From: Dendrobates tinctorius
Lineage: Eukaryota
Reading direction: 5' to 3'
Assembly (NCBI RefSeq): GCF_039654945.1
Contig: NW_027361798.1
Span: 3,906,001 to 3,970,000, forward strand
DNA: 64,000 nucleotides
Made by a program: the position numbers and the translations under genes. Positions within the stretch are counted from its first letter, which is position 1. The number at the start of each line of letters is the position of its first letter. Shown in pieces: positions 5,529 to 50,400 of the stretch. Under the pieces are notes generated by a model. That model was not told the origin of the DNA. It made no database searches and saw only the letters and a program-made list of their open reading frames with translations.

Positions 5529-5560
5529 TTGTATTCTCGTCTCTGTCCTGACAACCCAAA

Positions 5561-5600: not shown

Positions 5601-6322
5601 CAATTCCCGCTGGGGTCTAGCGGTCGCTGCTGGTGTGATCGCCGGGACCGGCTTGTGACGTTGCGCATTGGGGGAGACGTTCTCTCTTCTGGAGCTGATC
5701 CAGTGAGTAGTCTCAGTGTGAGGTGGGGCACAGATGATCCGGGTGTATGGAGGAATCGATCGGCCGCACAGTCACCTCCTATGATGCTGCAGTTACTACA
5801 GAGCAGAAATCCGAGTGCTGGTAATAAATGTGGTTGTGCCACGTCTCCTGCTGCTGAGATCCTGTGGGTTGTAGGATGGCTGCGAGGAGTGGAATGCGGC
5901 TGCACTGATGAATGGACGCCGGTGTGAACGCTCCTGAGCAGCGGCTCAGGATTGGGGTATCAACAGGATACCTACATGCGATGAGAGGGGCTGTCTGTGT
6001 TTCTGCGCCACCACATGGGCAGGGAGGGACGGTGCAGGAATACAGGGTCGCTCTGCCTGTGATCAGGAGAACATCTGCCCACATCACACTTTGCGCCAAT
6101 CACCGGATCTAAATCCCGGAGCAAATTATCATATACAGGAATATACCCACTGTGCCAACTGCTAATAGCAGGAATTATATCCACTGAGTCACCCACTAGA
6201 GAGATATATAGAGGATTATACCCACTGCTCTGTCACCAGGTCCCAACTCTACAGTAACGTCATCCGAGATGTGTGGAAAGGAATCAATGACCCCCAACTA
6301 TGGAACCACAGCTCTGCCCCTA

Positions 6323-17300: not shown

Positions 17301-17707
17301 CCTCAGCACAAGGCAAGACCAGTATGGCCCAAATGTGGCAAAGTTTTGAGTGCCCGCCACAAATGTCTACACCATCACAGACGGCTCCAGTCAGCAGGAG
17401 GCAACGTTTTCGTCAGATGGTGACAGACTACATGTCTTGCCCTGTCAGTGTACTCCCAGACGGCTCTTCCCCCGTCAATTTTTGGGTCTCTAAGCTGGAT
17501 ACATGGCCAGAGCTTAGCCAGTATGCATTGGAGGTGCTGGCTTGCCCTGCTGCTAGAGTATTATCGAAACGCGTCTTTAGTGCAGCAGGTGGTGTACTAA
17601 CAGATCGTCGCACGTGACTATCCTTCGATAACGTTGGCCGGCTTACTTTTCTGAAAATGAACAAGGCCTGGATCTCACCGGAATTTGCCAGTCCTCTTCC
17701 AGAATAA
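14383..17707 (+). pseudogene. hAT transposase (BED zinc finger, DDE, dimerisation domain), disrupted
   Basis: Motifs: WSFF...CKLC...WKHVRTKH, TTDAWT, VCDNGRN, CLAHVLNL, PTRWNST, PAARVLSKRVFS. Several frameshifts and stops. Confidence 0.92.
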
Positions 17708-24270: not shown

Positions 24271-27200
24271 GTCTAGAGGGCCTGTTCCGGGCACACGAGA
24301 CACATGCTTTCACGTATGCCTTGACGTCTCGAGCCATATGCGGCCATCAATATGACCTTGCCAGGAGTTCGGTGGTCCGTTTATTACCAAAATGGCCACC
24401 TAGCCTGGAGGCATGTGCCCAGGCAAGAACCTCTGGCCGTAGCCGAGGGGGCACTAAGGTCTTGCCTGGCGGTACCGACTCGAGATCGATAGGAGCCACG
24501 GTCGTAAAACTCTCTGGAGGGAGAATTAACCGAGGCTACGCTTCTCCCTCCTCCGCTGAGACCACCGAGCGTGAGAGGGCATCTGCTCGGACGTTCTTCT
24601 CCCAGGAGAGGTAGTGTAGGGTAAAGCGGAAGCGAGAAAAGAAGAGCGACCACCTGGCCTGACGGGAATTCAGGCGTTGGGCCGTCTGAAGATAGACCAG
24701 GTTTTTATGGTCCGTGAAGACCTGAAAGGGGAACCGGGCTCCCTCCAGGAGATGTCTCCACTCGGAAAAAGCCAATTTCATGGCCAGCAGCTCCCTGTCG
24801 CCGATGGAGTAATTTTGCTCCGCCGGTGAGAAGGTCTTAGAAGAAGCAGGGATGCTTCCGACCTTGAACATCCTTTTGGTAAAGGACTGCTCCTGCACAG
24901 ACGGAAGAAGCGTCTACCTCAAGGATAAACGGCTTATCCACATCGGGACGGTGTAAAATGGGAGCGCCTGCAAAGTGGGACTTTACGGAGGAAAAGGCCT
25001 TAGAAACCTGTTCGGTCCACGCCTTAGGATTAGCTCCTTTTTTCGTGAGAGCAACCAAAGGAGCTACCAGGGTGGAAAAGTGGGGTATAAACTGGCGATA
25101 ATAGTTAACGAACCCTAAAAAGCGCTACACCGCTTTAAGAGAATGGGGTTCCTGCCAGTCCATAACCGCTTGCAGTTTGGCCAGATCCATAGTCAACCCC
25201 TGGGCCGAGATGACGTAGCCCAGAAATGGCAAGGACTCCTGCTCGAACAGACACTTCTCCAGCTTGGCGAACAGGAAATTCGCCCGTAGGCGGTCAAATA
25301 CCCTGCAGACATCTTTCCGGTGGGTGGGCAAATCTGGCGAAAAGATGAGGATGTCATCCAGATAGACTACCACCGAGGTAGAAAGCATGTCACGGAAGAC
25401 GTCGTTGACGAAATCCTGGAAGACAGTGGGCGCATTACAAAGGCCAAAGGGCATGACCAGATATTCATAATGGCCATCCCGAGTATTAAAAGCTGTCTTG
25501 CACTCGTCTCCCTCACGAATACGGATCAGGTTGTATGCCCCTCGTAGATCTAGCTTAGTAAAGAGTCGCGCCCCACGCAACCTGTCGAACAACTCGGAGA
25601 TCAACGGGAGAGGGTACTTATTCTTGACCGTGATGGCATTGAGACCCCGGTAGTCGATGCAAGGGCGTAACTCTCTGCTCTTCTTCTGAACGAAGAAGCC
25701 TGCCCCGGCCGGTGACACCGACTTCCTGATAAAGCCCCGTGCCAGGTTCTCCCTGATGTATTGGGACATTGCCTCCGTCTCCGGGAGAGATAATGGGTAA
25801 ACACAACCTCGAGGAGGTTCTGTGCCTGGCAGGAGGTCAATCGGGCAGTCATAGGGACGGTGCGGTGGGAGTGTCTCCGCGGACTTCTTAGAGAAGACGT
25901 CCGCATATTGATGGTAAGGTTCAGGGAGCGTGGAGAGGTTTGTAGGCAGCTCCGTAGACGCTCCCTGAAGACTGTCCCTGAGACACCTACCCTCGCAGTC
26001 CTTGCTCCAGCCCAATATTCTCCCCGAAGCCCAATCAATGTGAGGGGAGTGACATCGAAGCCAGGGAACCCCAAGGAGTACCTGATCGATGCCATGAGGC
26101 ATAATAAGCAAGGACAGGGTCTCCGGATGTGAGGGGGACATGGCGAGACCGAGTGGGACCGTCTGATGGGTCACTCGAGACGGCAATGGTGCCCCATCCA
26201 CCACCCTGATGGTCAGAGGTTGTGGGAGTAATACCAGAGGGATAGTGTGACTCTGGGCAAAACTCGAGGACATAAAGTTCCCCTCGGCCCCGGAATCCAG
26301 AGTGACCTCTGCCTCCCAGGTGGAGGAAACATTATCTAGGGTACCCCGGAATACCGGCTTAGGCGAAAAGGACTCCATCTGGGACTGGCCACCACCTACA
26401 ACCATGGAACGGGGTCGTCCCTTCGGCCGCTGAGGACATGTGCCAGCCGTGTGGCCAAAGTGTTGGCAGTGGTAACAGCGCACGGAGCCCCGCACCTGAC
26501 GTGGCTTAGTACCGGTGCGAGATACCTCCATGGGCTCGGTGGAGGGAGACTCCTGTGCGAAATGGCTCAGCGGTTCGGTAAAGGTGGGAGCCAGGTTAAT
26601 TTTACGCCGGGATTGAGTCCTCTCCAACCCGCGCTCCTTGAACCGGAGATCAATACGGGTGGAGACGGTGATCAATTCCTCCAGAGTTGTGGGAATATCT
26701 CGGGTAGCTAGAGCATCCTTGACGTGCTCAGCTAGGCTTCTCCAGAACACTGGGACTAATACTTTGTCCGGCCACTCCAGTTCGGAAGCCAATGTCCGAA
26801 ACCGGACAGCATAATGGCTAACCGAGAGTGACCCTTGCGTTAAGGACAACAGGTCGAGAGCCGTATCGTGCGTGACCTGTGGTCCTAAGAAGACCTGCTT
26901 CAGAGCCGCGAGGAACTGAGCAGGCCCCTGAACCAGAGGATCATCACGTTCCCACAATGGCGTGGCCCACTGCAATGCCCGGCCAGACAATAAGGAGACA
27001 ATGAAGCCCACCTTAGCCCGCTCTGTAGGAAACCGTGCAGCCAGCAACTCCAGGTGAATGGAGCACTGACTGACGAATCCCCTACAGGTGGCGCTTTCAC
27101 CCGAAAACTTATCGGGGAGCGGGAGGGAAGAGATTGTCGGCGAGGGCAAGAGTGTGGGTACACGTGAGACGGCCTCAGCGACCGTCTGGGCGGCAGCTAG

Positions 27201-28212
27201 AGCAGCATTCGCAGCTGAGTTGGTGCTCTCGATAGCCGCCAACCTGCTCTCCAGCTGCCGAATGTAGCGCTGCAGCTGCTGCACGTCTGCCATTGTCAGC
27301 CAGACCCTGGCGCTAGTGTAATGTTATGGTCGGCGGAACGCACCAGATATAAAATAATAAGAGGTGCGTTCGCCGCCCGGGGTCCACCGTGCGGTAGTTG
27401 GTAGGACCGCTGCTGGGCAATGGCAGATGCACCAGAAGGTGAAGTAGTGCGCACGGGTTAATGTCACCCGAACGCTAGGAGCGGCTCTGTTCAGACACAG
27501 AGTCGCTTGCCAGAAATAAATACAAAGGTGCTGGCCCTGTTATCGTCACAGGAGTCAGCGTGTGGCGTCGCAGCCGCGAACACCAATAGCTGCTGTTAAT
27601 GCAGCGCAGCGGCAACTATAGCCGCAAGCGTCGGCGCCGAGGACCGGGCACCGACGGACGCTAGTGTAGGCGAAGCAGCACTGTGGCGTAGCTTGCCTCT
27701 AATTGGTGCTGACCTAAGAACACTCTCTGTCACCAATCGTATTATCCGAGGGAAGGGGTTTCATAATGAGTCAGCCAACAGTCCATGCATCCGTCACCAT
27801 TCACACACATAGCAAGATAAGTCTACACTAGCGCATCGCCGAGCCGCCCTGCGGGCTTTTTATAGCGATGCACTTCCGGAACCTTCCATTAGCTTGGGAA
27901 GGACCAATCAGATCCGACGCAGGACCTGAGCATGTGACCCCTGCTCTCCAGTGAGAGGTCAAGTTGCGGGCATGCCCAGTAGCACGGCATGAGGACTTAG
28001 CCTCAGGAGCGGTTCCCTGCAAAGCAGGTTGCGCTGCCATTGCTGCACCAGAGGTGGCAGCAACATCCAGGCTGCCAGAGCGAGTCTGAGCAGCAGGCCT
28101 GGCTCGCCGTGTTTGCTGAGCAACACCCGGAGCGGTTGAGGAAGAATGGGAGACCGCAGGATGTCTGGCTCTGGATTCCTGCTGTGCAGTGCCAGGAATC
28201 CGACGCTTAACA

Positions 28213-32078: not shown

Positions 32079-32204
32079 ACTAATAGAGGATTATACCCAC
32101 TGTGACGAACAATAATAGAGGATTATACCCATTGTGCCAAGCACTAATAGCAGAGGATTTTTACCCACTGTGCCAGGCACTAATAGAGGATTATATTCAC
32201 TGTG
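32079..32204 (+). repeat. 32-bp satellite remnant
   Basis: About four degenerate monomers. Confidence 0.85.
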
Positions 32205-32696
32205 CGTCGCGGTCATTGGCGGTCTGTGAGAAGCGCGATCTTCCTGTCGGACTCACCACAGATCCATCAGGACGTGTCGCCCTTCCTGGGACTGTCAGGA
32301 CAGAGGTCGTCAGTAGCCGCAGTGTTTTATGGTGAAGCGGCTTCTCACTGATGCGGGGGACAGCTCGGCGCCTCCTCCGCTCCCGGGAGAAAGTTTCCCG
32401 TCACCTCCTGTATTCGCTGCACACTCTGCGGCCCATACAGACACTGCGGCAAGAGCTGCTGCGGTATCATCAGGAGCAGACTGCAGTCTCTGGTGCCCGC
32501 AGCACAAGAGCCAAGATCGTGGGTACAGAGCTCTCTATACCGCCCCCGGCGCAGACACCAGTGGGGACCACCGGCCGAGATCAGCTCTGATGAGAAAATG
32601 TGGGGGATCTTAGAAGAGCCTGGATCCTACAGAATGATCTCTATATACCGCCCGGTGCAGACCCCAGTGTGACCCATCCTCCGAGATCAGCGGCGT

Positions 32697-32769: not shown

Positions 32770-33846
<1,077 letters not shown>

Positions 33847-34980: not shown

Positions 34981-35021
34981 GAGCTCATCTGTGGGAGAAT
35001 TTGGTGGCTCTGAGAAGAGCC
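34981..35021 (-). terminator. Histone stem-loop and HDE (H3)
   Basis: Minus strand GGCTCTTCTCAGAGCC (35021-35006), followed by AGATGAGCTC. Confidence 0.92.
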
Positions 35022-35050
35022 TTTGTGTTGTGGTTGGTGCTCGGAAAGAT

Positions 35051-35515
<465 letters not shown>

Positions 35516-35880
35516 TTATCCCCTAGTGCGCGTCCTCATTGGTCTATAGGAAACACGCCCCCTGCACGCCATTGGTGATTACATTAAATAGAAGCCAATA
35601 AAAACCTGATTTGTTTGACCAATTATCGTGAAGCAAACCGCGGCCTCCCGCCCTGTAACCCCGCCTCCTCCATGATGCGGCTCTCAGCAGATCGCGCTCA
35701 TCTCCCGCTGTACAGAATAGAGAAATCCGGTGACGTCATCTCCAGCACAGGAGGAGACCTGGAGCAGCCGCCACCGCACTGCCATGACCCCGTGTACACA
35801 GCGCTGTACAGTGCAGCTCCCCATTATCACCAGATCACACCCATCCTGACACTGCGCCCGGATTATCAGCAGCTCATAAA

Positions 35881-37590
35881 CTGCAGAGGAGGCACTGATC
35901 ATACAGCTCTGCAGGGAGGAGGTGGTGGCACTGATCATACAGCTATGCAGGAAGGAGGTGGCACTGATCATACAGCTCTGCAGGGAGGAGGTGGTGGCAC
36001 TGATCATACAGCTATGCAGGGAGGAGGTGGTGGCACTGATCATACAGCTCTGCAGGGAGGAGGTGGCACTGATCATACAGCTCTGCAGTGAGGAGGTGGT
36101 ACTGATCATACAGCTCTGCAGGGAGGAGGTGGCACTGATCATACAGCTCTGCAGGGAGGAGGTGGCACTGATCATACAGCTCTGCAGGGAGGAGGTGGCA
36201 CTGATCATACAGCTCTGCAGGGAGGAGGTAGCAGTGATCATACAGTTCTGCAGGGAGGAGGTGGCACTGATCATACAGCTCTGCAGGGAGGAGGTGGCAC
36301 TGATCATACAGCTCTGCAGGGAGGAGGTGGCACTGATCATACAGCTCTGCAGGGAGGAGGTGGCACTGATCACACAGCTCTGCAGGGAGGAGGTGGCACT
36401 GATCATACAGCTCTGCAGGAAGGAGGTGGTGGCACTGATCATACAGCTCTGCAGGGAGGAGGAGGAGGCACTGATCACACAGCTCTGCAGGAAGGAGGTG
36501 GTGGCACTGATCATACAGCTCTGCAGGGAGGAGGTGGTGGCACTGATCACACAGCTCTGCAGGGAGGAGGTGGCACTGATCATACAGCTCTGCAGGGAGG
36601 TGGTGGCACTGATCATACAGCTCTGCAGGGAGGAGGTGGTGGCACTGATCATACAGCTCTGCAGGGAGGAGGTGGTGGCACTGATCATACAGCTCTGCAG
36701 GGAGGGGGTGGTGGCACTGATCATACAGCTCTGCAGGGAGGAGGAGGCACTGATCACACAGCTCTGCAGGGAGGAGGTGGCACTGATCATACAGCTCTGC
36801 AGGGAGGAGGTTGTGGCACTGATCATACAGCTCTGCAGGGAGGAGGAGGCACTGATCACACAGCTCTGCAGGGAGGAGGAGGAGGCACTGATCACACAGC
36901 TCTGCAGGGAGGAGGTGGCACTGATCATACAGCTCTGCAGAGAGGAGGTGGTGGCACTGATCATACAGCTCTGCAGGGAGGAGGTTGTGGCACTGATCAT
37001 ACAGCTCTGCAGGGAGGAGGTGGTGGCACTGATCATACAGCTCTGCAGGGAGGAGGTGGCACTGATCATACAGCTCTGCAGGGAGGAGGTGGTGGCATTG
37101 ATCATACAGCTCTGCAGGGAGGAGGTGGTGGCACTGATCATACAGCTCTGCAGGGAGGTGGTGGCACTGATCATACAGCACTGCAGTGAGGAGGTGGTGG
37201 CACTGATCATACAGCTCTGCAGGGAGGAGGTGGTGGCACTGATCATACAGCTCTGCAGGGAGGAGGTGGCACTGATCATACAGCTCTGCAGGGAGGAGGT
37301 GGTGGCATTGATCATACAGCTCTGCAGGGAGGAGGTGGTGGCACTGATCATACAGCTCTGCAGGGAGGTGGTGGCACTGATCATACAGCACTGCAGTGAG
37401 GAGTTGGTGGCACTGATCATACAGCTCTGCAGGGAGGAGGTGGTGGCACTGATCATACAGCTCTGCAGGGAGGAGGTGGTGCCACTGATCATACAGCTTT
37501 GCAGGGAGGAGGTGGTGCCACTGATCATACAGCTCTGCAGGGAGGAGGTGGTGCCACTGATCATACAGCTCTGCAGGGAGGAGGTGGTGG
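35881..37590 (-). repeat. 33/36-bp minisatellite, about 49 units, derived from the H1 3'-processing signal
   Basis: Minus-strand unit ATCAGTGCC(ACC)ACCTCCTCCCTGCAGAGCTGTATG, contiguous with the H1 stem-loop. Confidence 0.95.
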
Positions 37591-37604
37591 CTCTGATAAG
37601 AGCC
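37565..37604 (-). terminator. Histone stem-loop and first HDE (H1)
   Basis: Minus strand GGCTCTTATCAGAGCC (37604-37589), then ACCAC, then AGAGCTGTA. Confidence 0.9.
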
Positions 37605-37633
37605 TTTGTGGGATGAGGACAGGGCGGCTCCGC

Positions 37634-38269
37634 TTATTTCTTGGCCACGGGCTTCTTGGATTTAGCCGCCTTCTTAGCCGGAGTCCTGGCAGCTTTGGGT
37701 TTTGCCGCCTTCTTAGCGGGGCTCTTTGTCACCTTCTTGGGCTTCGGAGCGGCCTTCGGCTTCTTAGGGCTCTTGGCTGCTTTTTTGGCTGCAGCGGGCT
37801 TCTTGGCCTTTTTCGGGCTCTTCTTGGCCGCGGTCGGAGCCTTCTTGGGCTTCTTCGGGGATTTGGCCGCTTTCTTGGCTGCGGGTTTCTTGGCCGCAGC
37901 CGCCGGCTTTTTCTTGTCCTTGGTCTCCTGCTTCTTGTTCAGCTTGAATGACCCGGAGGCGCCGCTGCCCTTTATCTGGAGCAGGGCGCCCTTGGTGACC
38001 AGACCCCTGACGGCCAGCTTCAGGCGGCTGTTATTCTTCTCCACATCGTACCCTCCGGCAGCCAGAGCCTTCTTCAGGGAGGCCAGAGACACCCCGCTGC
38101 GCTCCTTGGAGGCGGACACGGCTTTGACTATCAGCTCGGACACGCTGGGGCCGGAGGGCTTCTTGCTCTTCTTGGCGCTCCCTGCAGCGGGTTTCTTTAC
38201 CTGCTTCTTGGACTTGGCAGCCGGTTCGGCGGGAGGAGGAGGAGCGGCGGCTGGCGCGGTCTCTGCCAT
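37634..38269 (-). CDS. H1: Somatic linker histone H1 (211 aa)
   Basis: [10 protein letters not shown]; globular domain [23 protein letters not shown]...GASGSFKL; K/A/P-rich tail. TATA near 38342 and CCAAT near 38366 and 38399 on the - strand. Confidence 0.98.
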
Positions 38270-39524
38270 TGTGTAACGAGGAACTGCCAGAATAATCTTC
38301 TGCAAGGAAAACACTGAGGACTGAGCGGGAGCAGCCTCATATATACAGTCACACTGCGCACTGATTGGCTGCCGAGCTGCGTCCTCCTGAGCTTCTATTG
38401 GCTGACACTGGACACAGGCCCCGCACCTCCTGTCTGAGACGGGTGAAGCTCCGCTCTCCCCTTGTGCTTCCTTGCCCGGGATAAGCGTCCATTACCGGCC
38501 AGGACCGGGCAGCAGAGCCGCTGTCTCCGTGTCCTCCTCCTCCCTGACATCTCCCCCACATGTCTATAGAGGTCACTGGCGGAGGAGGCAGGAAGGAGCC
38601 GGGAGGAGCCCCGGGATCTGCCCGTAGTCCTGGAGCTGCTGAGAGGCCAGAAGGAGACACAGGCGCCCATCAATCCCAGTGTGTCCAGATCTCTGTATCC
38701 AGCGCCATCGGGAGCATTGCAGAGTGATCAGCGCTATATGGCAGAAGACCGCACTATATGGAGGTCGGGTTTGCTGCAAGATCCGGAGTGTATTCCGCCT
38801 TGTTCGATGCTAACAGCACCATCTGGACGGAGACAGCACTGTATGGGGGTATATGCAGCAGTCTATCCAGGAATAGAGACTATATGGAGGGCTATTAGCG
38901 CTATATGGAGGTATACAGTACTTCTTGAAGGGTATATACCAAAACATGTGTATGGATCGGTAATTGGCTGTATACAGCACGGTGTTACAGAAGTATATGG
39001 AGATCTCCAGCATTTACAGCCAGATAGGGCGGTATACTGCATGATATTGATTTTACAGCACTATATGGAGGTATGCAGTCCCGTATGGTGATATATAGCA
39101 GTGTATGATGTGTAAACAGCAGTATATACAGCCCTATATGGAGGTGTCAGCACTATGTTGGATTCTTCACTATTCGGGGCTGTATAGCAGTATAGAGGGC
39201 GCTTACGGCACTTTATGGAGATATACATGACTATATGGAGGTAATCGGCATTATAGTGAGGGTATTCAACCTTATCTATAGATTAGACAGATTTTTCTGG
39301 AATCCTTGCTGCAGTATATGAGTATTCAGCACTAGATGGCAGTATACAGCATATGTGGCCTCTGTAGTGCTGTATACCGCCCAGTATGGAGTCAGCTGAG
39401 GATAAACGGGAATTCCACACTCCCTGGTGCTGCGGCCACTGGAGACAATCAGCGCTGGGATCTCCCAATATGTACGCCGCCTGGAGTCACTGAGAATACA
39501 TCCAGTAACACCGACCATGAACCT

Positions 39525-40752
39525 GCACTAATAGAGGATTATACCCACTGTGCCAGGCACTAATAGACGGTTATACCCACTGTGCCAGGCACTAATAGAG
39601 GATTATACCCACTGTGCCAAGCACTAATAGATGGTTATACCCACTGTGCCAAGCACTAATAGAGGATTATACCCACTGTGCCAAGCACTAATAGAGGATT
39701 ATACCCACTGTGCCAAGCACTAATAGAGGATTATACCCACTGTGCCTCCAAGCACTAATAGAGGATTATACCCACTGTGTCAAGCACTAATAGGGGATTA
39801 TACCCACTGTGACAGGCACTAATAGAGGATTATACCCGCTGTGCCAAGCACTAATAGGGGATTATACCCACTGTGCCAGGCACTAATAGAGGATTATACC
39901 CACTGTGCCAAGCACTAATAGGGGATTATACCCACTGTGCCAGGCACTAATAGGGGATTATACCCACTGTGCCAAGCACTAATAGAGGATTATATCCACT
40001 GTGCCAAGCACTAATAGATGATTATACTCACTGTGACAAGCACTAATAGAGGATTATACCCACTGTGCCAAGCACTAATAGGGGATTATACCCACTGTGC
40101 CAAGCAATAATAGGGGATTATACCGACTGTGCCAAGCACTAATAGAGGATTATACCCGCTGTGCCAAGCACTAATAGAGGATTATACCCACTGTGCCAGG
40201 CACTAATAGAGGATTATACCCGCTGTGCCAAGCACTAATAGGGGATTATACCCACTGTGCCAGGCACTAATAGAGGATTATACCCACTGTGCCAAGCACT
40301 AATAGGGGATTATACCCACTGTGCCAGGCACTAATAGAGGGTTATACCCACTGTGCCAGGCACTAATAGAGGATTATACCCACTGTGCCAGGCACTAATA
40401 GAGGATTATATCCACTGTGCCAAGCACTAATAGATGATTATACTCACTGTGACAAGCACAAATAGAGGATTATACCCACTGTGCCAAGCACTAATAGGGG
40501 ATTATACCCACTGTGCCAAGCACTAATAGAGGATTATACCCGCTGTGCCAAGCACTAATAGGGGATTATACCGACTGTGCCAAGCACTAATAGAGGATTA
40601 TATCCACTGTGCCAAGCACTAATAGATGATTATACTCACTGTGACAAGCACTAATAGAGGATTATACCCACTGTGCCAAGCACTAATGGGGGATTATACC
40701 CACTGTGCCAAGCACTAATAGAGGATTATACCCACTGTGCCAGGCACTCATA
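39525..40752 (+). repeat. 32-bp satellite array
   Basis: Same monomer, fairly homogeneous. Confidence 0.97.
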
Positions 40753-41104
40753 GCTCTCCGGTCAGGTGGAGGCGTCTGACTGATGATGATCTCCCAGAGA
40801 TTGAATTATTTCCAGGCCGGAATCTCACATTGTCAGTAATTTCTCGTTCCTCCAGCGGCGCTGACAGGACGAGGTTTGCGGAATTTTCTTGTTAGCATAA
40901 TACAGAGAAGCGGGAAATTCACATCACCAACTGTCCTGTGCTCAGCCAATCAGCGAGAAAGGGGAGGGGCTGAAAATGCCAATTCAGGAAAACAAACATC
41001 TCCGTTACGCGTCATCACTGTGCAGTTTTCACTCCGGTCCGCCTAGCCTCCATATAAAGCAGGACTCAGCGCTGACCCCTTACAGTCGTCTGAAGATTTC
41101 CTGA

Positions 41105-41419
<315 letters not shown>

Positions 41420-41451
41420 TTGTATCCTCGTCTCTGTCCTGACAACCCAAA

Positions 41452-41491
41452 GGCTCTTCTCAGAGCCGCCCACATCTCACGTGAGAGGCTG
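41452..41491 (+). terminator. Histone stem-loop and HDE (H4 copy 2)
   Basis: GGCTCTTCTCAGAGCC at 41452-41467. Confidence 0.93.
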
Positions 41492-42027
41492 CAATTCCCG
41501 CTGGGGTCTAGCGGTCGCTGCTGGTGTGATCGCCGGGACCGGCTTGTGACGTTGCGCATTGGGGGAGACGTTCTCTCTTCTGGAGCTGATCCAGTGAGTA
41601 GTCTCAGTGTGAGGTGGGGCACAGATGATCCGGGTGTATGGGGGAATCGATCGGCCGCACAGTCACCTCCTATGATGCTGCAGTTACTACAGAGCAGAAA
41701 TCCGAGTGCTGGTAATAAATGTGGTTGTGCCACGTCTCCTGCTGCTGAGATCCTGTGGGTTGTAGGATGGCTGCGAAGAGTGGAATGCGGCTGCACTGAT
41801 GAATGGACGCCGGTGTGAACGCTACTGAGCAGCGGCTCAGGATTGGGGTATCAACAGGATACCTACATGCGATGAGAGGGGCTGTTTCTGCGCCACCACA
41901 TGGGCAGGGAGGGACGGTGCAGGAATACAGGGTCGCTCTGCCTGTGATCAGGAGAACATCTGCCCACATCACACTTTGCGCCAATCACCGGATCTAAATC
42001 CCGGAGCAAATTATCAAATACAGGAAT

Positions 42028-42613
42028 ATACCCACTGTGCCAACTGCTAATAGCAGGAATTATATCCACTGAGTCACCCACTAGAAAGATATATAGAGGA
42101 TTATATTCACTGTGCCAGACACTAATAGAGGATTATAATAATGCAAAGCACTAATTGAGGATTATACCCACTGTGCCGAGCACTAATAGCGTATTTTAAC
42201 CACTGTGCCAGGCACTAATAGAGGGTTATACCCACTGTGCCAAGTACTAATAGCAGATTGTACCCACTGTCTCAAGCACTAATACCAGAGGATTATACCC
42301 ATTGAACCAAGCACTAATAGCAGAGGATTTTTACCTACTGTGCCAAGCACTAATAGAGGATTATACTCACTCTGCCAGGTACTAATAGAGGATTTTACTT
42401 ACTGTGCCAAGCACTAATAGATGATTATACCCACTGTGCCAAGCACTAATAGATTATTATATTCACAATGCCAGGCACTAATAGAGGATTATACCCACTG
42501 TGCCAAGCACTAATAGAGGATTATGCCAATCAATACAATCACTAATAGAGGATTTTTACCCACTGTCTCAAGCACTAATACCAGAGGATTTTACCCACTG
42601 TGCCAAGCACTAA
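42028..42613 (+). repeat. Degenerate 32-bp satellite
   Basis: Same monomer family. Confidence 0.9.
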
Positions 42614-45004
42614 CCCTAACCCCGGCACAAGGCGCATAATGCTTCAAGTGACCAAGCAAGGCTGGGATTATCGGCTCTGTGGTGGGATCGGCGCCCACAC
42701 AGAGGATCCGGCCCGGTGATTGTACAGAGACTAGTGTTTAGCATTCCGATACCGCAAGTATCGGGTATCGGCCGATATTCGCAGTATCGTAATTCCAATA
42801 CTGAGTACCGATACTTTTAGCATATCGAGTACTGGAATCGGAAGTTCCCATAATGCTATGAGCCAGTTTGATTTGATTCAGCCAATGAGGAATCCTCAGA
42901 AGTGTGGGCACATCCTGTTAGGCATGTAGGCATGTTAACTAATGGCATGGCTGTGATTGGCTGCTGAAATGATGTCATGATGCACTATAAAAGCCGCCCC
43001 CATTTAGGGTTCACTCTGCTGTGAATTCAGTTAGGGACAGGCTGCTGATCAAGACTCTGAGGGACAGTTAGAGATAGCGATTTGCTATATTGTGCTTTAC
43101 CCAGGCTACATTATCAATCACTGTAGCTTTCTTTTGCCTTGCAGCGCTGTTCACAGCTGTCTGCAAGGTCTGTGTGAGTGCAGCTCACGGTGTAGTGTGT
43201 TCTGCACCCACCTCTGGTTGTAGGCCGCTCAGTGTGCGTCACTGCCTCATACTGTATATGTTTTGTTTTTTTTTATTGCTGCTCATTTTTCCTGATTTCT
43301 CCTATTAGTGTGCATCCATCCGTATCCATCTACATTGGTTGCAAACACTATAGGAGTAGACAGCGGAGCCTTTCTGCAGCCTGTCAGTGCTAGTGCCCAG
43401 TTCTCTGCACTGTTCACGGCTGTCTGTGAGGTCTCTGTGTGTGAGTGCAGCTCACGTTGTAGTGTGTTCTGCAGCCACCTCTGGTTGTAGTCCGCTCAGC
43501 GTGCGTCACTGCCTCATACATAGTCCTTTTTTTGTTTTATTGCAGCTCATTTTTCCTGATTTTTTTTCTCCTATTAGTGTGCTTCCATCCGTATCCATCT
43601 ACATTGGTTGGTTGCAAACACTATATAGAAGTAGATAGAGGAGCCTTTTTTCTGGCTTGTGCCCTGCAGCTGCAGCCAGATTAGTATTAGCCTATTTTTT
43701 GGAGCCTCATCTATTGCATTGTAGGTTACCTTCCTGCATTGTAATAGCTCCAAAAAGTTAGAGATACTATCACTTTCAAATCTTTGGTCACATCCTTTTT
43801 GGGTTTTTTTTAAAAAAACACGTAAATAAAGTTCACCAAACACTCCACTTGACACTTGTGTAGGCCACATTAGCTCATATTAAAGTGTAGTCCACACACT
43901 TCATAAAATTAGTGTTTCTTATACCTGTTAGCAGCAGTTCAGGAATAAGCACACAAAGGCCCCCCTTTGTCCTTTTCTGCCTATCTTTATCAGTCTACCA
44001 AGATGAAGAAGGCAGGGAGTAAGGCACGTGGTCATGGCCGTGGAGTTTCAGCAGGGAGAGGACGTGGGGATTCTGTGCCTGCTGCGGGCACCAGTGACCC
44101 GGCATCCCCCACTTTTACCAGGCAACAGTCCTTCATGCGCAGCTTTGTAGGACCTCGCCGTACCCCACTGCTGCGTGACGAACAAATTGAAGCCGTTGTC
44201 GGATGGATGGCAGCTAACGCATCCACTTCAATGACTTCCACATCCTCTCAGGGCCAGAGCACCGAAGAGCAACCATCTGTCTCTTCACCACCTGCCAAAT
44301 TGCCCAGGCAGTCAGAGAGCCCTGGACAGGAGCCATCTCAATCTTTACTTCTGTTCTCAGAATCTGTTGGCTTGGAAAGAGGGGGCCAGCCAAGCAGCAT
44401 TCTAGAATGTGAAGAAGAGGGAGTATGCAGTGATGCGCAACTTCTTTGTCCCTCTGAATCTGAAGAGGCGGGTGGGCCAGTGCCTATGATCAGCACACCT
44501 CTGTATGCCTCACATGATGAGACTCAGATGCCACTTTCTGGTGCGTACGGTGCTGCCGAGACTACCCAGGAGAAGCAGGTGTTTGAAGAGGGGAGTGTAG
44601 ATGATGAGGTCCTTGACCCATCATGGTGTGAGGAACAGGAAGGTGGTGGGAGCAGCTCTGAGGAAGAGATTCCCCGAACGGCCAAGACAGGAGGGAGAGG
44701 GCGGGGGCAGACTTGGTTGCCTGTAGCCTCCACTTCGGCACCCGTTAGGAGCATTCCTCTTCCAAAACCCAAAACGGGCGCTCCCAGGACTTGCAGTGCG
44801 TGGTCCTTTTTTGACACAGTTGCAGATGACATTTGCTTTGTCAAATGCAAGCTGTGTCATCAGAAAGTCAAAAGAGGGAAAAGTGTCAGCAACCTCAATA
44901 CCACTAATATGTGGAAACATGTGCGGACCAAGCACGAGGTGGAGTTACACAGACACACTGAAGACGTAGGTCAACGTACAGCACCACCTACCACCTCTTC
45001 AGCT

Positions 45005-46310
45005 TAGAATCATAGAATCGTAGAGTTGGAAGGGACCTCCTGGGCCATCTGGTCCAACCCCCTGCTCAAAGCAGGATTCGCTAAATCATCCCAGTCAGAT
45101 GCCTGTCCAGCCTCTGTTTGAAGACTTCCATTGAAGGAGAACTCACCACTTCTCGTGGCAGCCTGTTCCACTCATTGATCACTCTAACTGTCAAAAAGTT
45201 TTTTCTAATATCTAATCTATGTCTTCTCCCATTCAGTTTCATCCCATTGCTTCTAGTCTTTCCTTGTGCAAATGAGAATAAAGTTGATCCTTCTACAATG
45301 TGACAGCCCTTTAGATATTTGAAGACAGCTATTAAGTCTCCTCTCAGTCTTCTCTTTTGCAAACTAAACATTCCCAAATCCTGCAACCTTTCCTCATAAG
45401 ACAGGGTTTGCAGATCGGTCACCATTCTGGTCGCTCTTTTCTGAACTTGCTCCAGTTTGTTGATGTCTTTTTTAAAATGTGGTGCCCAAAACTGGACACA
45501 ATATTCCAGATGAGGTCTGACCAAAGAGGAGTAGAGGGAAATAATGACTTCACGTGATCTAGACTGTATGCTTCTGTTAATACATCCTAGAATTGCATTT
45601 GCCTTTTTTGCTGCTGCACCACACTGTTGACTCATATTCAGTCTGTAATCTATTAGTATACCCAAATCTTTTTCACATGTGCTGTTGCTTAGGCCTATTC
45701 CTCCCATTCTATATATGCTTTTTTCATTTTTATTGCCCAGATGTAGTACTTTGCATTTCTCCCTGTTAAAAACCATTCTGTTAGTTGCTGCCCACTTCTC
45801 CAGTTTATTTAAATCTTTTTGAATCCTCTCTCTCTCTTCTCTAGTATTAGCTATCCCTCCTAGCTTTGTGTCATCAGCAAATTTAATCAGTTTACCCTCA
45901 ATTCCTTCATCTAAATCGTTGATAAAGATGTTGAACAATACAGGGCCCAGGACAGAGCCCTGTGGTACCCCACTTGAGACATTCTTCCAACTGGATGTGC
46001 AGCCATTTACGACCACTCTTTGGGTCCGATCAGTAAGCCAGTTATGAATCCACCTAACAGTTGCCTTGTCCATTCCATACTTAGTCATTTTTTCAATAAG
46101 GATTGTATGAGAGACTTTGTCAAATGCTTTGCTGAAGTCAAGATATACTATATCTACAGCATTTCCTTGATCCACGCAATCAGTGATTCCGTCATAGAAG
46201 GAAATTAAGTTAGTCTGACATGACTTATTAGTTACAAACCCATGCTGACTCTGTTTAATCACTTCATTCTTATCCAGGTACTGACATACATGTTGTTTAA
46301 TAATTTGTTA
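45005..46310 (-). mobile_element. 5'-truncated CR1 LINE
   Basis: RT ORF 46262-45081; tail TAGAATCATAGAATC at 45005; flanked by an AGCT duplication. Confidence 0.96.
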
Positions 46311-47465
46311 AGCTTGTGTTGGGGCCTCTTCCTCCAGCTCACACACAGCTGGTTCGGCTTCCTCACAGGATCGCCATGGAAGAACCTCTGGCACTGTTGT
46401 CCGGAGACCCTGTGACATTCCACCCACAGCACCACGTTCCCTGTCATCCTCACACTCCCATGCCACTCTACAGCCATCGGTCGCACAGGCATGGGAGAAA
46501 AGGCGGCCATACTCGGCAAACCATCCCCGACCACAGGCTCTGAATGCTAGCATTGCCAAACTACTGGCCCTTGAAATGCTCTCATTCAGGCTGGTGGAGA
46601 CTGACACCTTCCGGAACTTCATGGCATTGGCAGTCCCACAATACACCGTGCCCAGCCGCTTTTATTTCAGCAGGCGAGCCGTCCCTGCCCTGCAAAAACA
46701 TGTGGAGGGAAAAATAAAACATGCGCTACTAAACGCCGTCAGTAGCAAGGTCCACCTGACCACTGATGCGTGGACCAATAACCATGGACAGGGACGATAC
46801 CTTTCCCTCACTGCCCATTGGGTCAATGTTGTGGAGCCGGGTACAGATCTGGAGAGTGGCTCTGTACGTGTTCTGCCAACTCCACGGATTGCAGGAATCC
46901 AGTCTGTACACATAGACTCCTCCTCCTACTCCAGTTCCTCTGAAACAGCGCAGCAGGAGCCTGTTACGACCGATATGAGCACAGCCGTGGCCAAACGTCA
47001 ACACGCCGTACTGAAATTAATTTCTTTGGGGAATCGAAGCCACACAGCGCAGGAGCTCTGGAATGCCATCAAGCAGGAGAGCGACGTGTGGTTTGTGCCA
47101 GCGAATCTCCAGCCAGGCTTGGTAGTGTGTGACAATGGCCGAAATCTGGTGGCAGCTCTGGGCCTAGACAACCTCACTCACATCCCATGTCTGGCACATG
47201 TGCTCAACTTGGTCATGCAGAGCTTTCTGAGGGACTATCCGGATCTTGATGCACTGCTGCACAAGGTCCGCATAGAGTGCGCTCACTTTCAGCGTTCCAG
47301 CATGGCAAGATCGCGCCTTGCTGCTCTGCAGTGCCGATTATGCCTTCCAGAACATCGCATCATATGTGACCTCCCCACCAGGTGGAATTCAACGTTACAT
47401 ATGTTGGAGCGATTGTGTGAGCAGCAGGCAGCAGTCATGGAGTACCAGCTGCATCAGGCGCAAAC

Positions 47466-50400
47466 TGTTAGGACGGCGGAACGCACCAAATATAAAATAA
47501 CAGGAGGTGCGTTCGACGCCCGGAGTCCACCGTGCGGTAGGTGACAAGACCGCTGCTGAACAATGGCAGATGCACCTAATCTATGAGGTACTGCGCTCGG
47601 GTTAACGTCACCCGAACGCTAAGGACGGCTCTGTTCTGGCACAGAGTCGCAAGGAACAATGTGATGCCGAGACGCGGCTCTGTTAATGTCACAGAGGCCT
47701 GCGTGTGGCGTCGCGACAGCGACCAAGAGTAGCTGCGGTTAGTGCGGCGCAGCGGCAGGTAAAGCCGCAGACGTCGGCGCTGAGACATAAGCGCCGACGG
47801 ACGCTAGTGTAGGCGAGGATCACGTGGCGTGTAGCTTGACACAGGCTGAGACTGACTATCCAACTCTCTGTCACCATTCGTAATATCCGAGGGAAGGGGT
47901 TTCATAATGCGTCAGTCACCAGTCCACACATCCATCACCATACACACACAGCATAATATGCTACACTAGCGCATCGCCGAGCCGCTATGCGGGCTTTTTA
48001 TAGCGATGCGCTTCCAGGACCTTCCATTAGCTTGGGAAGGACCAATCAGATCCGACGTAGGACCTGAGCATGTGACCCCTGCTCTCCAGTGAGAGGTCAA
48101 GTCTCGGGCATGCCCAGTAGCACGGCATGAGGACCTAGCCTCAGGAGCAGTTCCCTGCAGAGCAGGTTGCGCTGCTATTACTGCACCAGAGGTGGCAGCA
48201 ACATCCAGGCTGTCAGAGCGAGTCTGAGCAGCAAGTCTGGCTCGCCGTGTTTGCTGAGCAACACCTGGAGCGGTTGGGGAAGAATGGGAGACTGCAGGAT
48301 GTCTGGCTCTGGACTCCCGCTGTGCAGTGCCAGGAATCTGACGCCTAACATTACCCCCCCCCCCCCCCCAGGGTTGCCTCACTGCGCTCAAAAGCCACGA
48401 CCGGGAGCGGTGCATGAATGTTCTCCACCGGCTCCCATGTCCGAGCCTCGGGACCATTACCCTTCCAGTCCACCATATACAACTTTTTGCCACGGACAAA
48501 CCTACGCCCCACTATGGCGTTAACCTCATACTCGTCAGACGATAAGTCTGATGAACTGGTGGATGGCTCAGAAAACCGGACCATGTGAACTGGTTTGAGG
48601 AGGGACACATGAAACACGTCCGATATGGCCAAATGTGGAGGAAGAGCCAGGCGGTAGACCACTGAGCTGAGTCGCTCGAGGACTTTGAACGGTCCAATGT
48701 ATCGTGGTGCGAATTTGGGAGACTCGACCCGCAATTTAATGTTCCGGGTGGAGAGCCACACCATGTCGCAAGGGGAGAAGCTTGGCGCGAGTCGCCGGTG
48801 CGTGTCGGCGGACGCCCTCATCCTTTCTTTAGATGCCCGGATAGCATCCTGCGTGTGATCCCAAATGTCCCGGGCCTCCACTGCCCAGTCTGCCACCCTG
48901 GAGTCAGTGGAGGACACCGGCATTGGGACAGGAATGCGTGGGTGTTAACCATAACTTAGGAGAAAAGGCGTCTGACCAGTGGAATCGGCCGCCGCATTGT
49001 TTAGGGCAAACTCAGCCCAAGGTAGCAAGGATGCCCAGTCATCCTGCCTGGCAGAGACAAAATGTCGTAGATAGGTGACCATGGTCTGATTGGCCCTTTC
49101 GACCAAGCCATTCGTCTCGGGATGGTAGGCGGAAGACAGATTTAGCTCGATGCTGAGTAAGCTGCAGAGCTCCCTCCAAAAACGAGACGCAAACTGGGGG
49201 CCTTGGTCACTTACGATTTTGTCCGGCATACCATGTAGACGGAACACATGCTTAATGAACAGGATGGCCAGACCTCGGGCGGAGGGTAGGCGTGCGAGTG
49301 GCACCAGATATACCATTTTGGAAAAATGGTCGGTAACCACCCAGATGACCGTACTGCCACTGGACTTGGGCAGGCCAACTATAAAGTCCATGCCCACCTT
49401 TTCCCATGGTCTATCCGCTACTGGCAGGGGAAACAAGAGCCCCGCCGGCCTCTGTCTAGAGGGCCTGTTCCGGGCACACGAGACGCATGCTTTCACGTAT
49501 GCCTTGACGTCTCGAGCCATATGTGGCCACCAATATGACCTTGCCAGGAGTTCGGTGGTCCGTTTATTACCAAAATGGCCACCTAGCCTGGAGGCATGTG
49601 CCCAGGCAAGAACCTCCGGCCGTAGCTGGGGGGGCACCAAGGTCTTGCCTGGCGGTACCGACTCGAAAGCGATAGGAGCCACGGTCGTAAAACTCTCCGG
49701 AAGGAGAATTAACCGAGGCTCAGCTTCTCCTTCTTCCGCTGAGACCACCGAGCACGAGAGGGCATCTGTTCGGATGTTCTTCTCCCCGGAGAGGTAGTGC
49801 AGGGTAAAGCGGAAGCGAGAGAAGAAGAGCGACCACCTGGCCTGACGGGAATTCAGGCGTTGAGCCGTCTGAAGATTGACCAGGTTTTTGTGGTCCGTGA
49901 ACACCTGAAAGGGGAACCGGGCTCCCTCCAGGAGATGTCTCCACTCGGAGAAAGACAATTTTATGGCCAGCAGCTCCCTGTCGCCGATGGAGTAATTTTT
50001 CTCCGCCGGTGAGAAGGTCTTAGAATAGAAGAAGCAGGGATGCTTCCGACCTTGAGCATCCTTTTGGTAAAGGACTGCTCCTGCACCGACAGAAGAAGCG
50101 TCTACCTAAAGGATAAACGGCTTATCCACATCGGGACGGTGTAAAATGGGAGCGCCTGCAAAGTGGGACTTTATGGAGGAAAAAGCCTTAGAAACCTGTT
50201 CGGTCCACGCCTTAGGATTAGCTCCTTTTTTCGTGAGAGCAACCAAAGGAGCTACCAGAGTGGAGAAGTGGGGTATAAACTGACGGTAATAATTGACGAA
50301 CCCCAAAAAGCGCTGCACCGCTTTAAGAGAATGGGGTTCCTGCTAGTCCATAACCGCTTGCAGTTTGGCCGGATCCATAGCCAACCACTGGGCCGAGATG

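What the first reader, a model, noticed from the sequence alone, without database searches (positions are those of the whole stretch)
35881..37604. About 49 tandem U7-binding sites: a minisatellite built from the H1 3'-processing signal
Seen: on the H1 sense strand the stem-loop GGCTCTTATCAGAGCC is followed by ACCAC-CTCCTCCCTGC-AGAGCTGTA-TG. The segment from the stem 3' half (ATCAGAGCC, changed to ATCAGTGCC) through the HDE then repeats about 49 times over 1.7 kb, ending just upstream of the co-oriented H3 promoter. Most units keep AGAGCTGTA, and length variation lies mostly in the ACC/TCC spacer. Known: the vertebrate U7 snRNA 5' end contains UACAGCUCU, a perfect 9-nt complement. U7 pairing to the HDE directs cleavage and is linked to termination. 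Amphibian oocyte histone loci show read-through transcription and carry U7-rich histone locus bodies. Inference: H1 read-through RNA could be a multivalent, SLBP-free U7 platform, acting as a fail-safe terminator protecting H3, a U7 sponge, or a histone-locus-body seed. A neutral slippage expansion is equally possible.
Basis: partly seen in the sequence, partly recalled or inferred. Interest (0 to 1): 0.88.

Follow-up and report, generated by a model that had tools for sequence, protein, structure and literature searches.

The report
Minisatellite copied from H1 processing signal
Behind a frog histone H1 gene, the short signal that normally tells the cell where to cut the H1 message has been copied head-to-tail 48 more times; this is real and unusual in origin, but the tests possible here point to an ordinary fast-evolving DNA repeat, not to a proven new regulatory device.

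Summary
Window 35891-37597 (sense on the minus strand) holds 49 head-to-tail units of 33/36 bp. The first unit is the genuine H1 3' signal: stem 3' half, ACC/TCC spacer and HDE. It matches the canonical unit at 35 of 36 positions.

Thirty-seven units keep AGAGCTGTA, the exact complement of UACAGCUCU in mouse and human U7. By predicted pairing, 43 units bind that U7 end as well as or better than the genuine HDEs of H4, H2B and H3 in this window. No unit has an SLBP stem-loop.

The functional reading is not supported by the tests I could run:
- The 9-mer is no better conserved than its flanks (12/441 vs 8/735 mismatches).
- Variants spread as blocks, including a 210-bp six-unit duplication.
- Two RNA libraries show H1 mRNA but almost no array words, and none of the distal spacer.

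The array is not private. Unit words are very abundant in DNA-like runs of this species and of a relative. This scan's first readers also noted similar arrays behind other H1 copies of this genome, on other DNA (unchecked).

Best reading: a young, neutral or selfish minisatellite family seeded in the H1 3' flank (about 0.6). A U7 platform or fail-safe terminator remains possible (about 0.2). I found no paper describing such a repeat.

The parts
37634..38272 (-). Histone H1 coding sequence (212 aa from the ATG at 38272; stop at 37636-37634), apparently intact. TATA and CCAAT elements lie upstream at about 38340-38400.
   Evidence: ORF list; Pfam Linker_histone, E=4e-21; nearest relatives are H1 proteins of dendrobatid frogs at 86-92% identity.
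37589..37604 (-). H1 3' stem-loop GGCTCTTATCAGAGCC (SLBP site). Its last 9 nt are also the start of unit 0 of the array.
   Evidence: Pattern scan of all six histone stem-loops in the window; Rfam Histone3 31.1 bits, E=3.3e-6, at 37563-37609.
37564..37572 (-). Genuine H1 HDE core AGAGCTGTA, 16 nt after the stem. This is the same position as the (A/G)AGCTG cores of H2A, H2B and H4 in this window.
   Evidence: Predicted duplex with the mouse U7 5' end is -15.7 kcal/mol, the strongest of the six genes.
35891..37597 (-). The array: 49 units of 33/36 bp, written on the minus strand as [ATCAGTGCC][ACC/TCC spacer][CTGC][AGAGCTGTA][TG]. It comprises 1 genuine plus 48 copied HDE sites.
   Evidence: TRF; 49 pattern hits against 0 expected; unit list and variant map.
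37013..37432 (-). Two adjacent copies of a six-unit (210-bp) higher-order block (37432-37223 and 37222-37013). They share the same order of variant units, including two units with a mutated HDE (AGTGCTGTA) and two with CAATG.
   Evidence: The unit-type string contains DECFGC followed by HECFGC; unit list.
35641..35890 (-). Non-repeated spacer between the distal end of the array and the H3 promoter. It holds a TGACGTCA site at about 35733-35740. There is no AATAAA or ATTAAA on the minus strand anywhere between the H1 stem-loop and the H3 ATG.
   Evidence: Sequence; poly(A)-signal scan. Word share is 0.00 in RNA runs X9, X11 and X27, and 0.27-0.39 in four runs of unknown kind.
35051..35640 (-). 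Co-oriented histone H3 gene with its promoter (CCAAT boxes at about 35537-35625, TATA-like element at about 35510; CDS 35461-35051).
   Evidence: ORF list; Pfam Histone, E=8e-49; sequence.
34981..35026 (-). H3 3' stem-loop and weak HDE. This is the next processing signal that an H1 read-through transcript would meet.
   Evidence: Rfam Histone3 34.6 bits; duplex -7.4 kcal/mol.

Best explanation
The array is a young, fast-turning-over minisatellite. It belongs to a repeat family that arose in the 3' flank of H1 genes of this dendrobatid-like frog lineage.

A 36-nt segment was duplicated in tandem. It runs from the loop and 3' half of the H1 stem, through the triplet-repeat spacer (ACC)2(TCC)2, to 3 nt past the HDE. 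It then expanded by replication slippage and unequal exchange or gene conversion. The strand-asymmetric spacer, C-rich on the sense strand and GGAGGAGGTGGTGG on the other, probably helped.

The U7-complementary 9-mer was carried along as a passenger. Selection is not detectably maintaining it inside the array. The genuine first unit still serves H1 mRNA 3' processing.

Shown: the anatomy of the array, its origin from the H1 signal, the block-wise spread of variants, the absence of HDE-specific conservation, and the abundance of the unit in DNA of this species and a relative.

Inferred: the slippage and unequal-exchange mechanism, and neutrality.

If H1 transcription does run on, the RNA would carry about 43 pairing-competent, SLBP-free U7 sites. 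That would be a by-product which could have consequences, but none is demonstrated.
For: 1. Origin. Unit 0, which contains the real stem 3' half and HDE, matches the canonical unit at 35 of 36 positions. The HDE core sits at the same distance from the stem as in the other histone genes.

2. No HDE-specific constraint. Mismatched cells are 12/441 in the 9-mer against 8/735 in the other fixed positions. There are 5 distinct variant types in 9 positions against 5 in 15. Four of the five HDE variant types break a U7 pair, and two of those four were themselves copied (AGTGCTGTA x2, ATAGCTGTA x2).

3. Signature of unequal exchange. Variant units are interspersed, there is a six-unit 210-bp duplication, and length changes come only in steps of 3 nt within the ACC/TCC tract.

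4. Context. The same 64 kb holds other large minisatellites with similar unit sizes and no link to processing signals: a 32-bp family with up to 120 copies around both H4 genes, and a 34-bp array of 34 copies.

5. Family behaviour. Canonical-unit words have far higher depth than the H1 coding sequence in run X1 (same species) and in X16 (a relative whose H1 pieces are 86-95% alike). Many diverged unit variants were seen, some with a changed HDE core.
   - First-reader notes report arrays of 437, 1246, 1889 and 15982 letters behind other H1 copies, one behind a dead H1 (unchecked).
   - An expressed H1 paralog appears to have only two HDE copies before unlike sequence (record 9).

6. RNA. Canonical-unit bins 37440-37499 have depth 0 in RNA runs X9 and X11, while the H1 coding sequence has depth 4-15. 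The distal spacer has a share of 0.00 in X9, X11 and X27.

7. In Drosophila, recruitment of FLASH and U7 snRNP to the histone locus body does not need the pre-mRNA cis elements (PMC4896052). A U7-recruiting array is therefore not needed in the one system where this was tested.
Against: - The array is so young (units 97-99% alike) that the conservation test has little power. The commonest HDE change (A>G, 6 units) keeps a G.U pair.
- The units are good U7 partners by energy: -14 kcal/mol, matched by only 0.8% of shuffles.
- The unit consensus in the relative X16 differs at only one well-supported spacer position. This looks at least as conserved as the H1 coding pieces, although concerted evolution can do this.
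- There is no poly(A) signal between H1 and H3, so run-on polymerases would need some other way to stop.
- One RNA contig of an H1 paralog does run at least 95 nt past the stem-loop and across two HDEs.
- Four runs of unknown kind, with contig totals typical of the RNA runs here, hold 27-39% of the distal spacer words.
- The RNA libraries examined are of unknown tissue and are probably not oocyte nuclear RNA.
Confidence: 0.6

Rival explanations
1. Fail-safe terminator or repeated processing signal. Polymerases that pass the normal H1 site transcribe the array. U7 snRNP pairs with downstream units and CPSF73 cuts at a fixed distance from each HDE. Degradation of the downstream RNA then dislodges Pol II before it reaches the H3 promoter. 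The upstream product still has the stem-loop and first HDE, so it can be processed normally.
For: - 43 of 49 units pair with the U7 5' end at -13.5 to -14 kcal/mol, as well as or better than the genuine HDEs of H4, H2B and H3 here.
- There is no poly(A) signal on the sense strand between H1 and H3.
- H1 and H3 are co-oriented, here and in Phyllobates terribilis and Ranitomeya imitator.
- An H1 paralog transcript reads across two HDEs.
Against: - The HDE shows no excess conservation.
- The units lack the SLBP site that normally stabilises U7 on a 9-bp duplex. In mouse extract an interrupted 8-bp duplex is not cleaved, and the well-cleaved H2a substrate forms 16 bp.
- Array words are nearly absent from two RNA libraries.
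- Array length varies from 2 units to hundreds between H1 copies, which is not what a tuned device would show.
Confidence: 0.14
2. U7 sponge or histone-locus-body seed. In oocytes with lampbrush-type run-on transcription, long array RNAs tether many U7 snRNPs at the histone loci. This would help to build or anchor the U7-rich bodies attached there, or would buffer free U7.
For: - Amphibian oocyte 'spheres' (histone locus bodies) contain U7 snRNP and attach at the histone loci (PMC12046345).
- Newt satellites next to genes are transcribed by read-through on lampbrush loops (PMC5615363).
- The unit family is abundant in DNA-like runs of two species.
- The units are multivalent and free of SLBP sites.
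Against: - No oocyte RNA was examined.
- In Drosophila, U7 snRNP and FLASH reach the body without the pre-mRNA cis elements.
- The HDE is not specially conserved.
- The RNA libraries available show almost no array RNA.
Confidence: 0.07
3. DNA-level role. The array acts as a spacer or boundary between the H1 and H3 transcription units, or as a recombination-prone tract that drives homogenisation of the amplified histone clusters. This would be independent of any RNA.
For: - The array lies exactly between two co-oriented genes and makes up 1707 bp of the 2172 bp between them.
- It has a G-rich strand, with 103 overlapping matches to a two-tetrad G-quadruplex pattern on the plus strand.
- It shows block-wise exchange.
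- Similar minisatellites flank H4.
Against: - No protein-binding motif was tested or found.
- Variable length among copies argues against a fixed spacer.
- Recombination proneness is a property of minisatellites in general, not evidence of function.
Confidence: 0.07
4. Assembly artefact: a short duplication inflated by mis-assembly of repeat reads.
For: Tandem arrays are hard to assemble, and the exact copy number cannot be verified from k-mer contigs.
Against: - The units carry ordered, non-random variants and a clean 210-bp higher-order duplication.
- Independent runs hold multi-unit contigs, up to 853 nt, and very high unit-word depth.
- The variant private to the three proximal units is present in run X1 at a depth of the order of single-copy sequence.
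Confidence: 0.02

Closest known systems
Histone downstream element (HDE), the U7 snRNA pairing site of replication-dependent histone pre-mRNAs
   Same: - It has the same core sequence as the genuine H1 HDE.
- It has 9 contiguous Watson-Crick pairs with the UACAGCUCU of vertebrate U7.
- Its predicted pairing energy lies within or above the range of the real HDEs in this window.
   Different: - 48 of the 49 sites have no stem-loop upstream, hence no SLBP site and no defined cleavage context.
- They are arranged in tandem.
- There is no evidence that they are used.
Classical G-rich minisatellites evolving by slippage, unequal exchange and gene conversion (interspersed variant repeats, higher-order blocks)
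   Same: - The unit size is 33/36 bp.
- The strands are asymmetric, with a GGAGGAGGTGG-type motif.
- Variant units are interspersed and there is a 210-bp higher-order duplication.
- Length variation lies in a simple triplet tract.
- Neighbouring minisatellites of 32 and 34 bp occur in the same cluster.
   Different: The unit can be traced, base for base, to a defined RNA-processing signal of the adjacent gene. It is shared by many copies of a multigene family.
Satellites derived from multigene families, e.g. the 5S rDNA-derived PcP190 satellite of hyloid frogs (recalled from memory, not checked here)
   Same: A piece of a tandemly repeated gene family has become a repeat family of its own. It is present in more than one species.
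   Different: - The source here is a 36-nt non-coding 3' signal, not a gene body.
- The arrays stay attached to the parent gene.
- I found no paper describing an HDE-derived repeat.
Newt (Notophthalmus, Triturus) satellites beside histone clusters, transcribed by read-through on lampbrush loops
   Same: It is a tandem repeat lying directly downstream of histone genes in an amphibian. Failure of termination would put it into RNA (PMC5615363; PMC12046345).
   Different: - To my knowledge the newt satellites are not reported to derive from the processing signal or to carry U7 sites.
- Transcription of the present array is not shown.

Membership tests
Functional histone downstream element (U7 site used in 3' processing) | Purine-rich core complementary to the 5' end of U7 snRNA | tested here: met
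   AGAGCTGTA is the complement of UACAGCUCU in human and mouse U7. Duplex energy is -14.0 kcal/mol in 37 units and -13.5 in 6. This species' own U7 was not available. The shared (A/G)AGCTG core of the other histone genes in the window implies the same U7 sequence.
Functional histone downstream element (U7 site used in 3' processing) | Lies about 10-20 nt downstream of an SLBP-binding stem-loop and cleavage site | tested here: not met
   This is met only by the first unit, whose core lies 16 nt after the stem. The other 48 have no stem-loop: there is no Rfam Histone3 match inside the array at E<=10.
Functional histone downstream element (U7 site used in 3' processing) | U7-dependent cleavage or U7 binding of the RNA | not testable with these tools
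   This needs 3'-end mapping, pull-down or in vitro processing.
Functional histone downstream element (U7 site used in 3' processing) | Core more conserved than its surroundings | tested here: not met
   Mismatched cells are 12/441 in the core against 8/735 in the flanks, p=0.06 in the wrong direction. Power is low because the units are 97-99% alike.
Minisatellite evolving by slippage and unequal exchange | Head-to-tail units of 10-100 bp with interspersed variants and higher-order blocks | tested here: met
   TRF finds period 36 and 49.2 copies. The unit map shows a six-unit duplication.
Minisatellite evolving by slippage and unequal exchange | Copy number differs between loci, individuals or species | tested here: inconclusive
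   - An expressed paralog appears to have two HDE copies before unlike sequence (record 9).
- First-reader notes report arrays of 437 to 15982 letters elsewhere in the genome (unchecked).
- The H1-H3 distance is 2172 bp here, 1042 bp in P. terribilis and about 930 bp at most in R. imitator. No DNA was served for the latter two.
Gene-family-derived satellite | Unit homologous to part of a multigene-family member, with many copies in the genome and in related species | tested here: met
   Homology to the H1 3' end is 35/36. Unit-word depth far exceeds the depth of the H1 coding sequence in X1 (same species) and X16 (a relative). The tool warns that depth is not a copy number.
Read-through-transcribed histone-linked satellite (newt lampbrush type) | Array present in RNA contiguous with the upstream histone transcript | tested here: inconclusive
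   - One 486-nt RNA-library contig of a paralog runs from the coding sequence through the stem-loop and two HDEs.
- Canonical-unit bins have depth 0, and one 66-nt array contig has depth 2.2.
- DNA carry-over cannot be excluded.
- No oocyte library was examined.

The most novel reading that the evidence does not exclude
The H1-linked HDE arrays of this frog lineage are transcribed by run-on from H1, at least in oocytes or early embryos. They would then act as SLBP-free, multivalent docking sites for U7 snRNP. In that role they could give repeated chances for U7/CPSF73 cleavage that terminates Pol II before H3, and could concentrate U7 at the histone loci as a natural RNA scaffold for the histone locus body.
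Probability: 0.18. Interest if true: 0.85.

Novelty: new variant of a known kind. Interest (0 to 1): 0.5.

Why it matters
If the array is only a repeat, it is still a clean, datable example of how a minisatellite is born. The founder unit is still in place and still working as the H1 processing signal. The repeat has spread through an amplified gene family and into a related species.

If it is transcribed, it would be the first natural RNA with dozens of U7 sites. That would make three long-standing questions directly testable with a natural reagent:
- how histone transcription terminates;
- how tightly packed co-oriented histone genes avoid interference;
- what anchors U7-rich bodies to amphibian histone loci.

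The sequence alone cannot decide between these readings. The tests available here lean to the plain one.

Tried and rejected
- **Coding reading.** The array gives ORFs of 626, 459 and 564 aa. This follows from units that are multiples of 3 and have four stop-free frames. Pfam finds nothing in the longest ORF, and a protein search with a 150-aa piece found nothing. Rejected.
- **Rfam matches to bacterial ar14** inside the array score 17-27 bits against a gathering score of 58.8. These are chance matches to a repeat. Rejected.
- **Array in other public DNA.**
  - An exact-pattern scan of metagenome contigs found nothing.
  - Exact-protein look-ups of this H1, at 212 and 226 aa, were not on record.
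  - Look-ups of the nearest dendrobatid H1 proteins returned gene layouts but no DNA, because the assemblies are too large to serve. The cross-species sequence comparison therefore could not be made directly.
- **Literature.** Searches for an HDE-derived repeat, by term and by the unit sequence, found none. A frog tandem-repeat survey (PMC12054243) mentions histones only as CENP-A.
- **This species' U7.** The U7 survey (PMC5054213) prints no sequences in its text, and the Wu and Gall paper is not held. Mouse and human U7 from PMC7026596 were used as a proxy.
- **Findings index by sequence.** A look-up with array sequence returned nothing.
Full report
**1. What is there**

The region holds two co-oriented histone genes on the minus strand.
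- H1: coding sequence 38272-37634, Pfam Linker_histone E=4e-21.
- H3: coding sequence 35461-35051, Pfam Histone E=8e-49.

Between them Tandem Repeats Finder reports one array at 35891-37597, with period 36, 49.2 copies and 91% matches. A 24-nt unit core with up to 3 mismatches is found 49 times. All hits are on the minus strand and inside the array, against none in 100 shuffles. The window has six histone 3' stem-loops: two H4, H2B, H2A, H3 and H1. The H1 stem-loop is at 37604-37589 and scores 31.1 bits against Rfam Histone3.

**2. Anatomy and origin**

Read on the H1 sense strand, the stem-loop is followed by ACCACCTCCTCC, CTGC, AGAGCTGTA and TG. The 36 nt starting inside the loop at 37597 match the canonical repeat unit at 35 of 36 positions. 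The genuine processing signal is therefore unit 0 of the array, and 48 further units follow.

The GAGCTG/GAGGCT part of the core lies 17-19 nt after the stem in H1, H2A, H2B and both H4 genes. This shows that the first AGAGCTGTA is the true HDE and that the repeat was made from it, not the reverse.

Units are 36 nt (27), 33 nt (21) or truncated (1). All length change lies in the ACC/TCC triplet tract. H1 is the only one of the six genes whose spacer between stem and HDE is itself a small triplet repeat. I take this as the likely reason the expansion started here; that is an inference.

**3. U7 complementarity**

The human and mouse U7 sequences printed in PMC7026596 contain UACAGCUCU, the exact complement of the 9-mer. 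I used the first 20 nt of mouse U7 to predict duplex energies:

| Site | Predicted duplex (kcal/mol) |
|---|---|
| Genuine H1 HDE | -15.7 |
| 37 array units | -14.0 |
| 6 units with A>G, which keeps a G.U pair | -13.5 |
| 6 units with other changes | about -9.5 |
| H2A HDE | -14.1 |
| H2B HDE | -12.1 |
| H4 HDE | -11.8 |
| H3 HDE | -7.4 |

Only 0.8% of shuffled units reach -14. The units are therefore pairing-competent on paper.

They carry no SLBP site, as there is no Histone3 match inside the array even at E<=10. For scale, the well-processed mouse H2a substrate forms 16 bp with U7, and an interrupted 8-bp duplex is not cleaved in extract (PMC7026596). A bare 9-bp site without SLBP is thus at the weak end. 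This species' own U7 could not be read.

**4. Is the HDE protected inside the array?**

It is not detectably protected. Across the 49 units the 9-mer has 12 mismatched cells out of 441, and the other 15 fixed positions have 8 out of 735 (Fisher p=0.06, in the direction opposite to constraint). There are 5 distinct variant types in 9 positions against 5 in 15. Four of the five HDE variant types break a pair, and two of those were themselves duplicated. Power is low, however, because the units are 97-99% alike.

**5. Mode of growth**

The unit-type map is AABCDECFGCHECFGCIJGKLIGLMCCNGOPKPGQGGGRGGGSGCTUTV. It shows interspersed variants and a six-unit, 210-bp block present twice (37432-37223 and 37222-37013). 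This is the pattern left by unequal exchange or conversion.

The sense strand is C-rich (624 C against 344 G). The other strand carries GGAGGAGGTGGTGG in every unit. From memory, this resembles the G-rich cores of classical minisatellites.

The same window holds other big minisatellites of similar unit size that have nothing to do with processing signals. These are a 32-bp family around both H4 genes, with 120 copies at 7178-11079, and a 34-bp array at 22732-23897.

**6. Is it private to this copy?**

It is not private. I laid four public runs on 37440-38330.
- In X1 (same species label), canonical-unit bins have summed word depth up to about 215,000, against 12,000-76,000 on the H1 coding sequence. 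This run behaves like DNA: mean contig length is about 45 nt, and depth is about 19 on the little-shared stretch upstream of the H1 coding sequence (38310-38330).
- In X16 (a different species label, with H1 pieces 86-95% alike), the array bins have depth 6,000-25,000 against 100-750 on the coding sequence. Its best-supported difference from this array is a single spacer position.
- The tool warns that these depths are not copy numbers, so I use them only to say that the unit is abundant in both species.
- Loose ends and inserts show diverged unit variants elsewhere, some with a changed core.
- The GTGGC variant of the three proximal units is almost private to this copy.

Separately, first readers of this scan noted similar arrays of 437, 1246, 1889 and 15982 letters behind other H1 copies of this genome. 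One lies 294 kb upstream of this window and one lies behind a dead H1. These are unchecked AI notes, and I could test them only indirectly through the depth data.

The nearest H1 proteins are from dendrobatid frogs: Ranitomeya variabilis, Phyllobates terribilis, R. imitator and Anomaloglossus, at 86-92% identity. H1 followed by a co-oriented H3 is also seen in P. terribilis, with 1042 bp between them, and in R. imitator. The distance here is 2172 bp, of which 1707 are array. No DNA was served for those assemblies.

**7. Is it transcribed?**

The evidence is weak and mixed.
- In RNA-labelled runs X9 and X11 the H1 coding sequence has depth 4-15. The canonical-unit bins 37440-37499 have depth 0. 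X9 has one 66-nt two-unit contig at depth 2.2, which could be DNA carry-over from a high-copy repeat.
- X11 has a 486-nt contig of an H1 paralog, about 93% alike. It runs from the coding sequence through the stem-loop and two HDE copies and then into unlike sequence. That RNA library therefore holds a molecule reading at least 95 nt past the normal cleavage site. Poly(A)-selected libraries would preferentially capture such unprocessed forms.
- The non-repeated spacer beyond the array (35610-35900) has a word share of 0.00 in RNA runs X9, X11 and X27. Its share is 0.27-0.39 in four runs of unknown kind whose contig totals resemble the RNA runs.
- There is no AATAAA or ATTAAA on the sense strand between the H1 stem-loop and the H3 ATG.

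**8. Interpretation**

The anatomy, the block-wise spread of variants, the lack of HDE-specific constraint, the variable length between copies and the minisatellite-rich setting all favour one reading. This is a young neutral or selfish minisatellite family, seeded in the H1 3' flank, with the U7 site as a passenger (about 0.6).

The functional readings remain open:
- fail-safe terminator or repeated processing signal, about 0.14;
- U7 sponge or histone-locus-body scaffold in oocytes, about 0.07;
- a DNA-level spacer or recombination role, about 0.07.

Known biology makes the functional readings plausible. [quoted passage not shown] Amphibian oocyte bodies rich in U7 sit on the histone loci. 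Newt satellites are transcribed by read-through. Against necessity, in Drosophila U7 snRNP and FLASH reach the body without the pre-mRNA cis elements.

**9. Novelty**

I found no paper on a repeat built from a histone downstream element, either by terms or by the unit sequence. As an object it is a new variant of a known kind: a minisatellite or satellite derived from a multigene family. It would be categorically new only if the RNA-level function were shown.

The masked N run in H2B (33567-33703) was left alone.

Noticed in passing
window 4425-4862, 7178-11079, 12581-13025, 32085-32205, 39525-40753, 42093-42613: A 32-bp minisatellite family (unit GGATTATACCCACTGTGCCAAGCACTAATAGG) occurs six times in the window. 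It has up to 120 copies and flanks both H4 genes. It shows no resemblance to a processing signal. A first-reader note (s1-364486) calls it an H4-linked landing pad for Harbinger elements.
   Followed up: partly
window 22732-23897: A 34-bp minisatellite of 34 copies (92% matches) produces several spurious ORFs of 280-520 aa on both strands.
   Followed up: no
window 5175-6099 and 41066-41984: Two H4 genes have identical protein sequences and near-identical 3' flanks, including stem-loops at 5561 and 41452 with the same 54 nt downstream. This points to recent duplication or conversion of the cluster unit.
   Followed up: no
window 5561, 32737(-), 33871, 37604(-), 41452: Only one of the six histone stem-loops (H3) reaches Rfam's gathering score for Histone3. 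H1 scores 31.1 against a gathering score of 34. A threshold scan would therefore miss most histone 3' ends here.
   Followed up: partly
window 37482, 37518, 37554 (three units nearest H1): These units read CAGTGGC where all other units, and nearly all depth in runs X1 and X16, read CAGTGCC. A private variant has been copied three times at the proximal edge of the array.
   Followed up: partly
window 35733-35740: There is a perfect TGACGTCA (CRE/ATF-type palindrome) in the unique spacer between the array and the H3 promoter. It lies upstream of four CCAAT-type boxes.
   Followed up: no
window 11055-12491, 45081-46262, 61584-63068; 25125-27293, 50343-52481; 57201-58241; 14347-17617, 43967-47544: The histone cluster is heavily invaded by mobile elements. 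Judged from the ORF translations only, these include three near-identical LINE-type reverse-transcriptase ORFs, two near-identical LTR-retroelement gag-pol ORFs of 712-722 aa, a Tc1/mariner-like transposase of 346 aa, and two copies of a large hAT-like ORF set.
   Followed up: no
window 33567-33703: A 137-nt run of N lies inside the H2B coding sequence.
   Followed up: no
window 55360-55521 and 58849-59148; 55657-56373, 56930-57165 and 58388-58714: Inverted pairs of GC-rich 20/40-bp repeats and of TACATAC-type 11-bp microsatellite tracts flank the Tc1-like ORF at 57201-58241. This suggests a large composite element or a palindromic arrangement.
   Followed up: no
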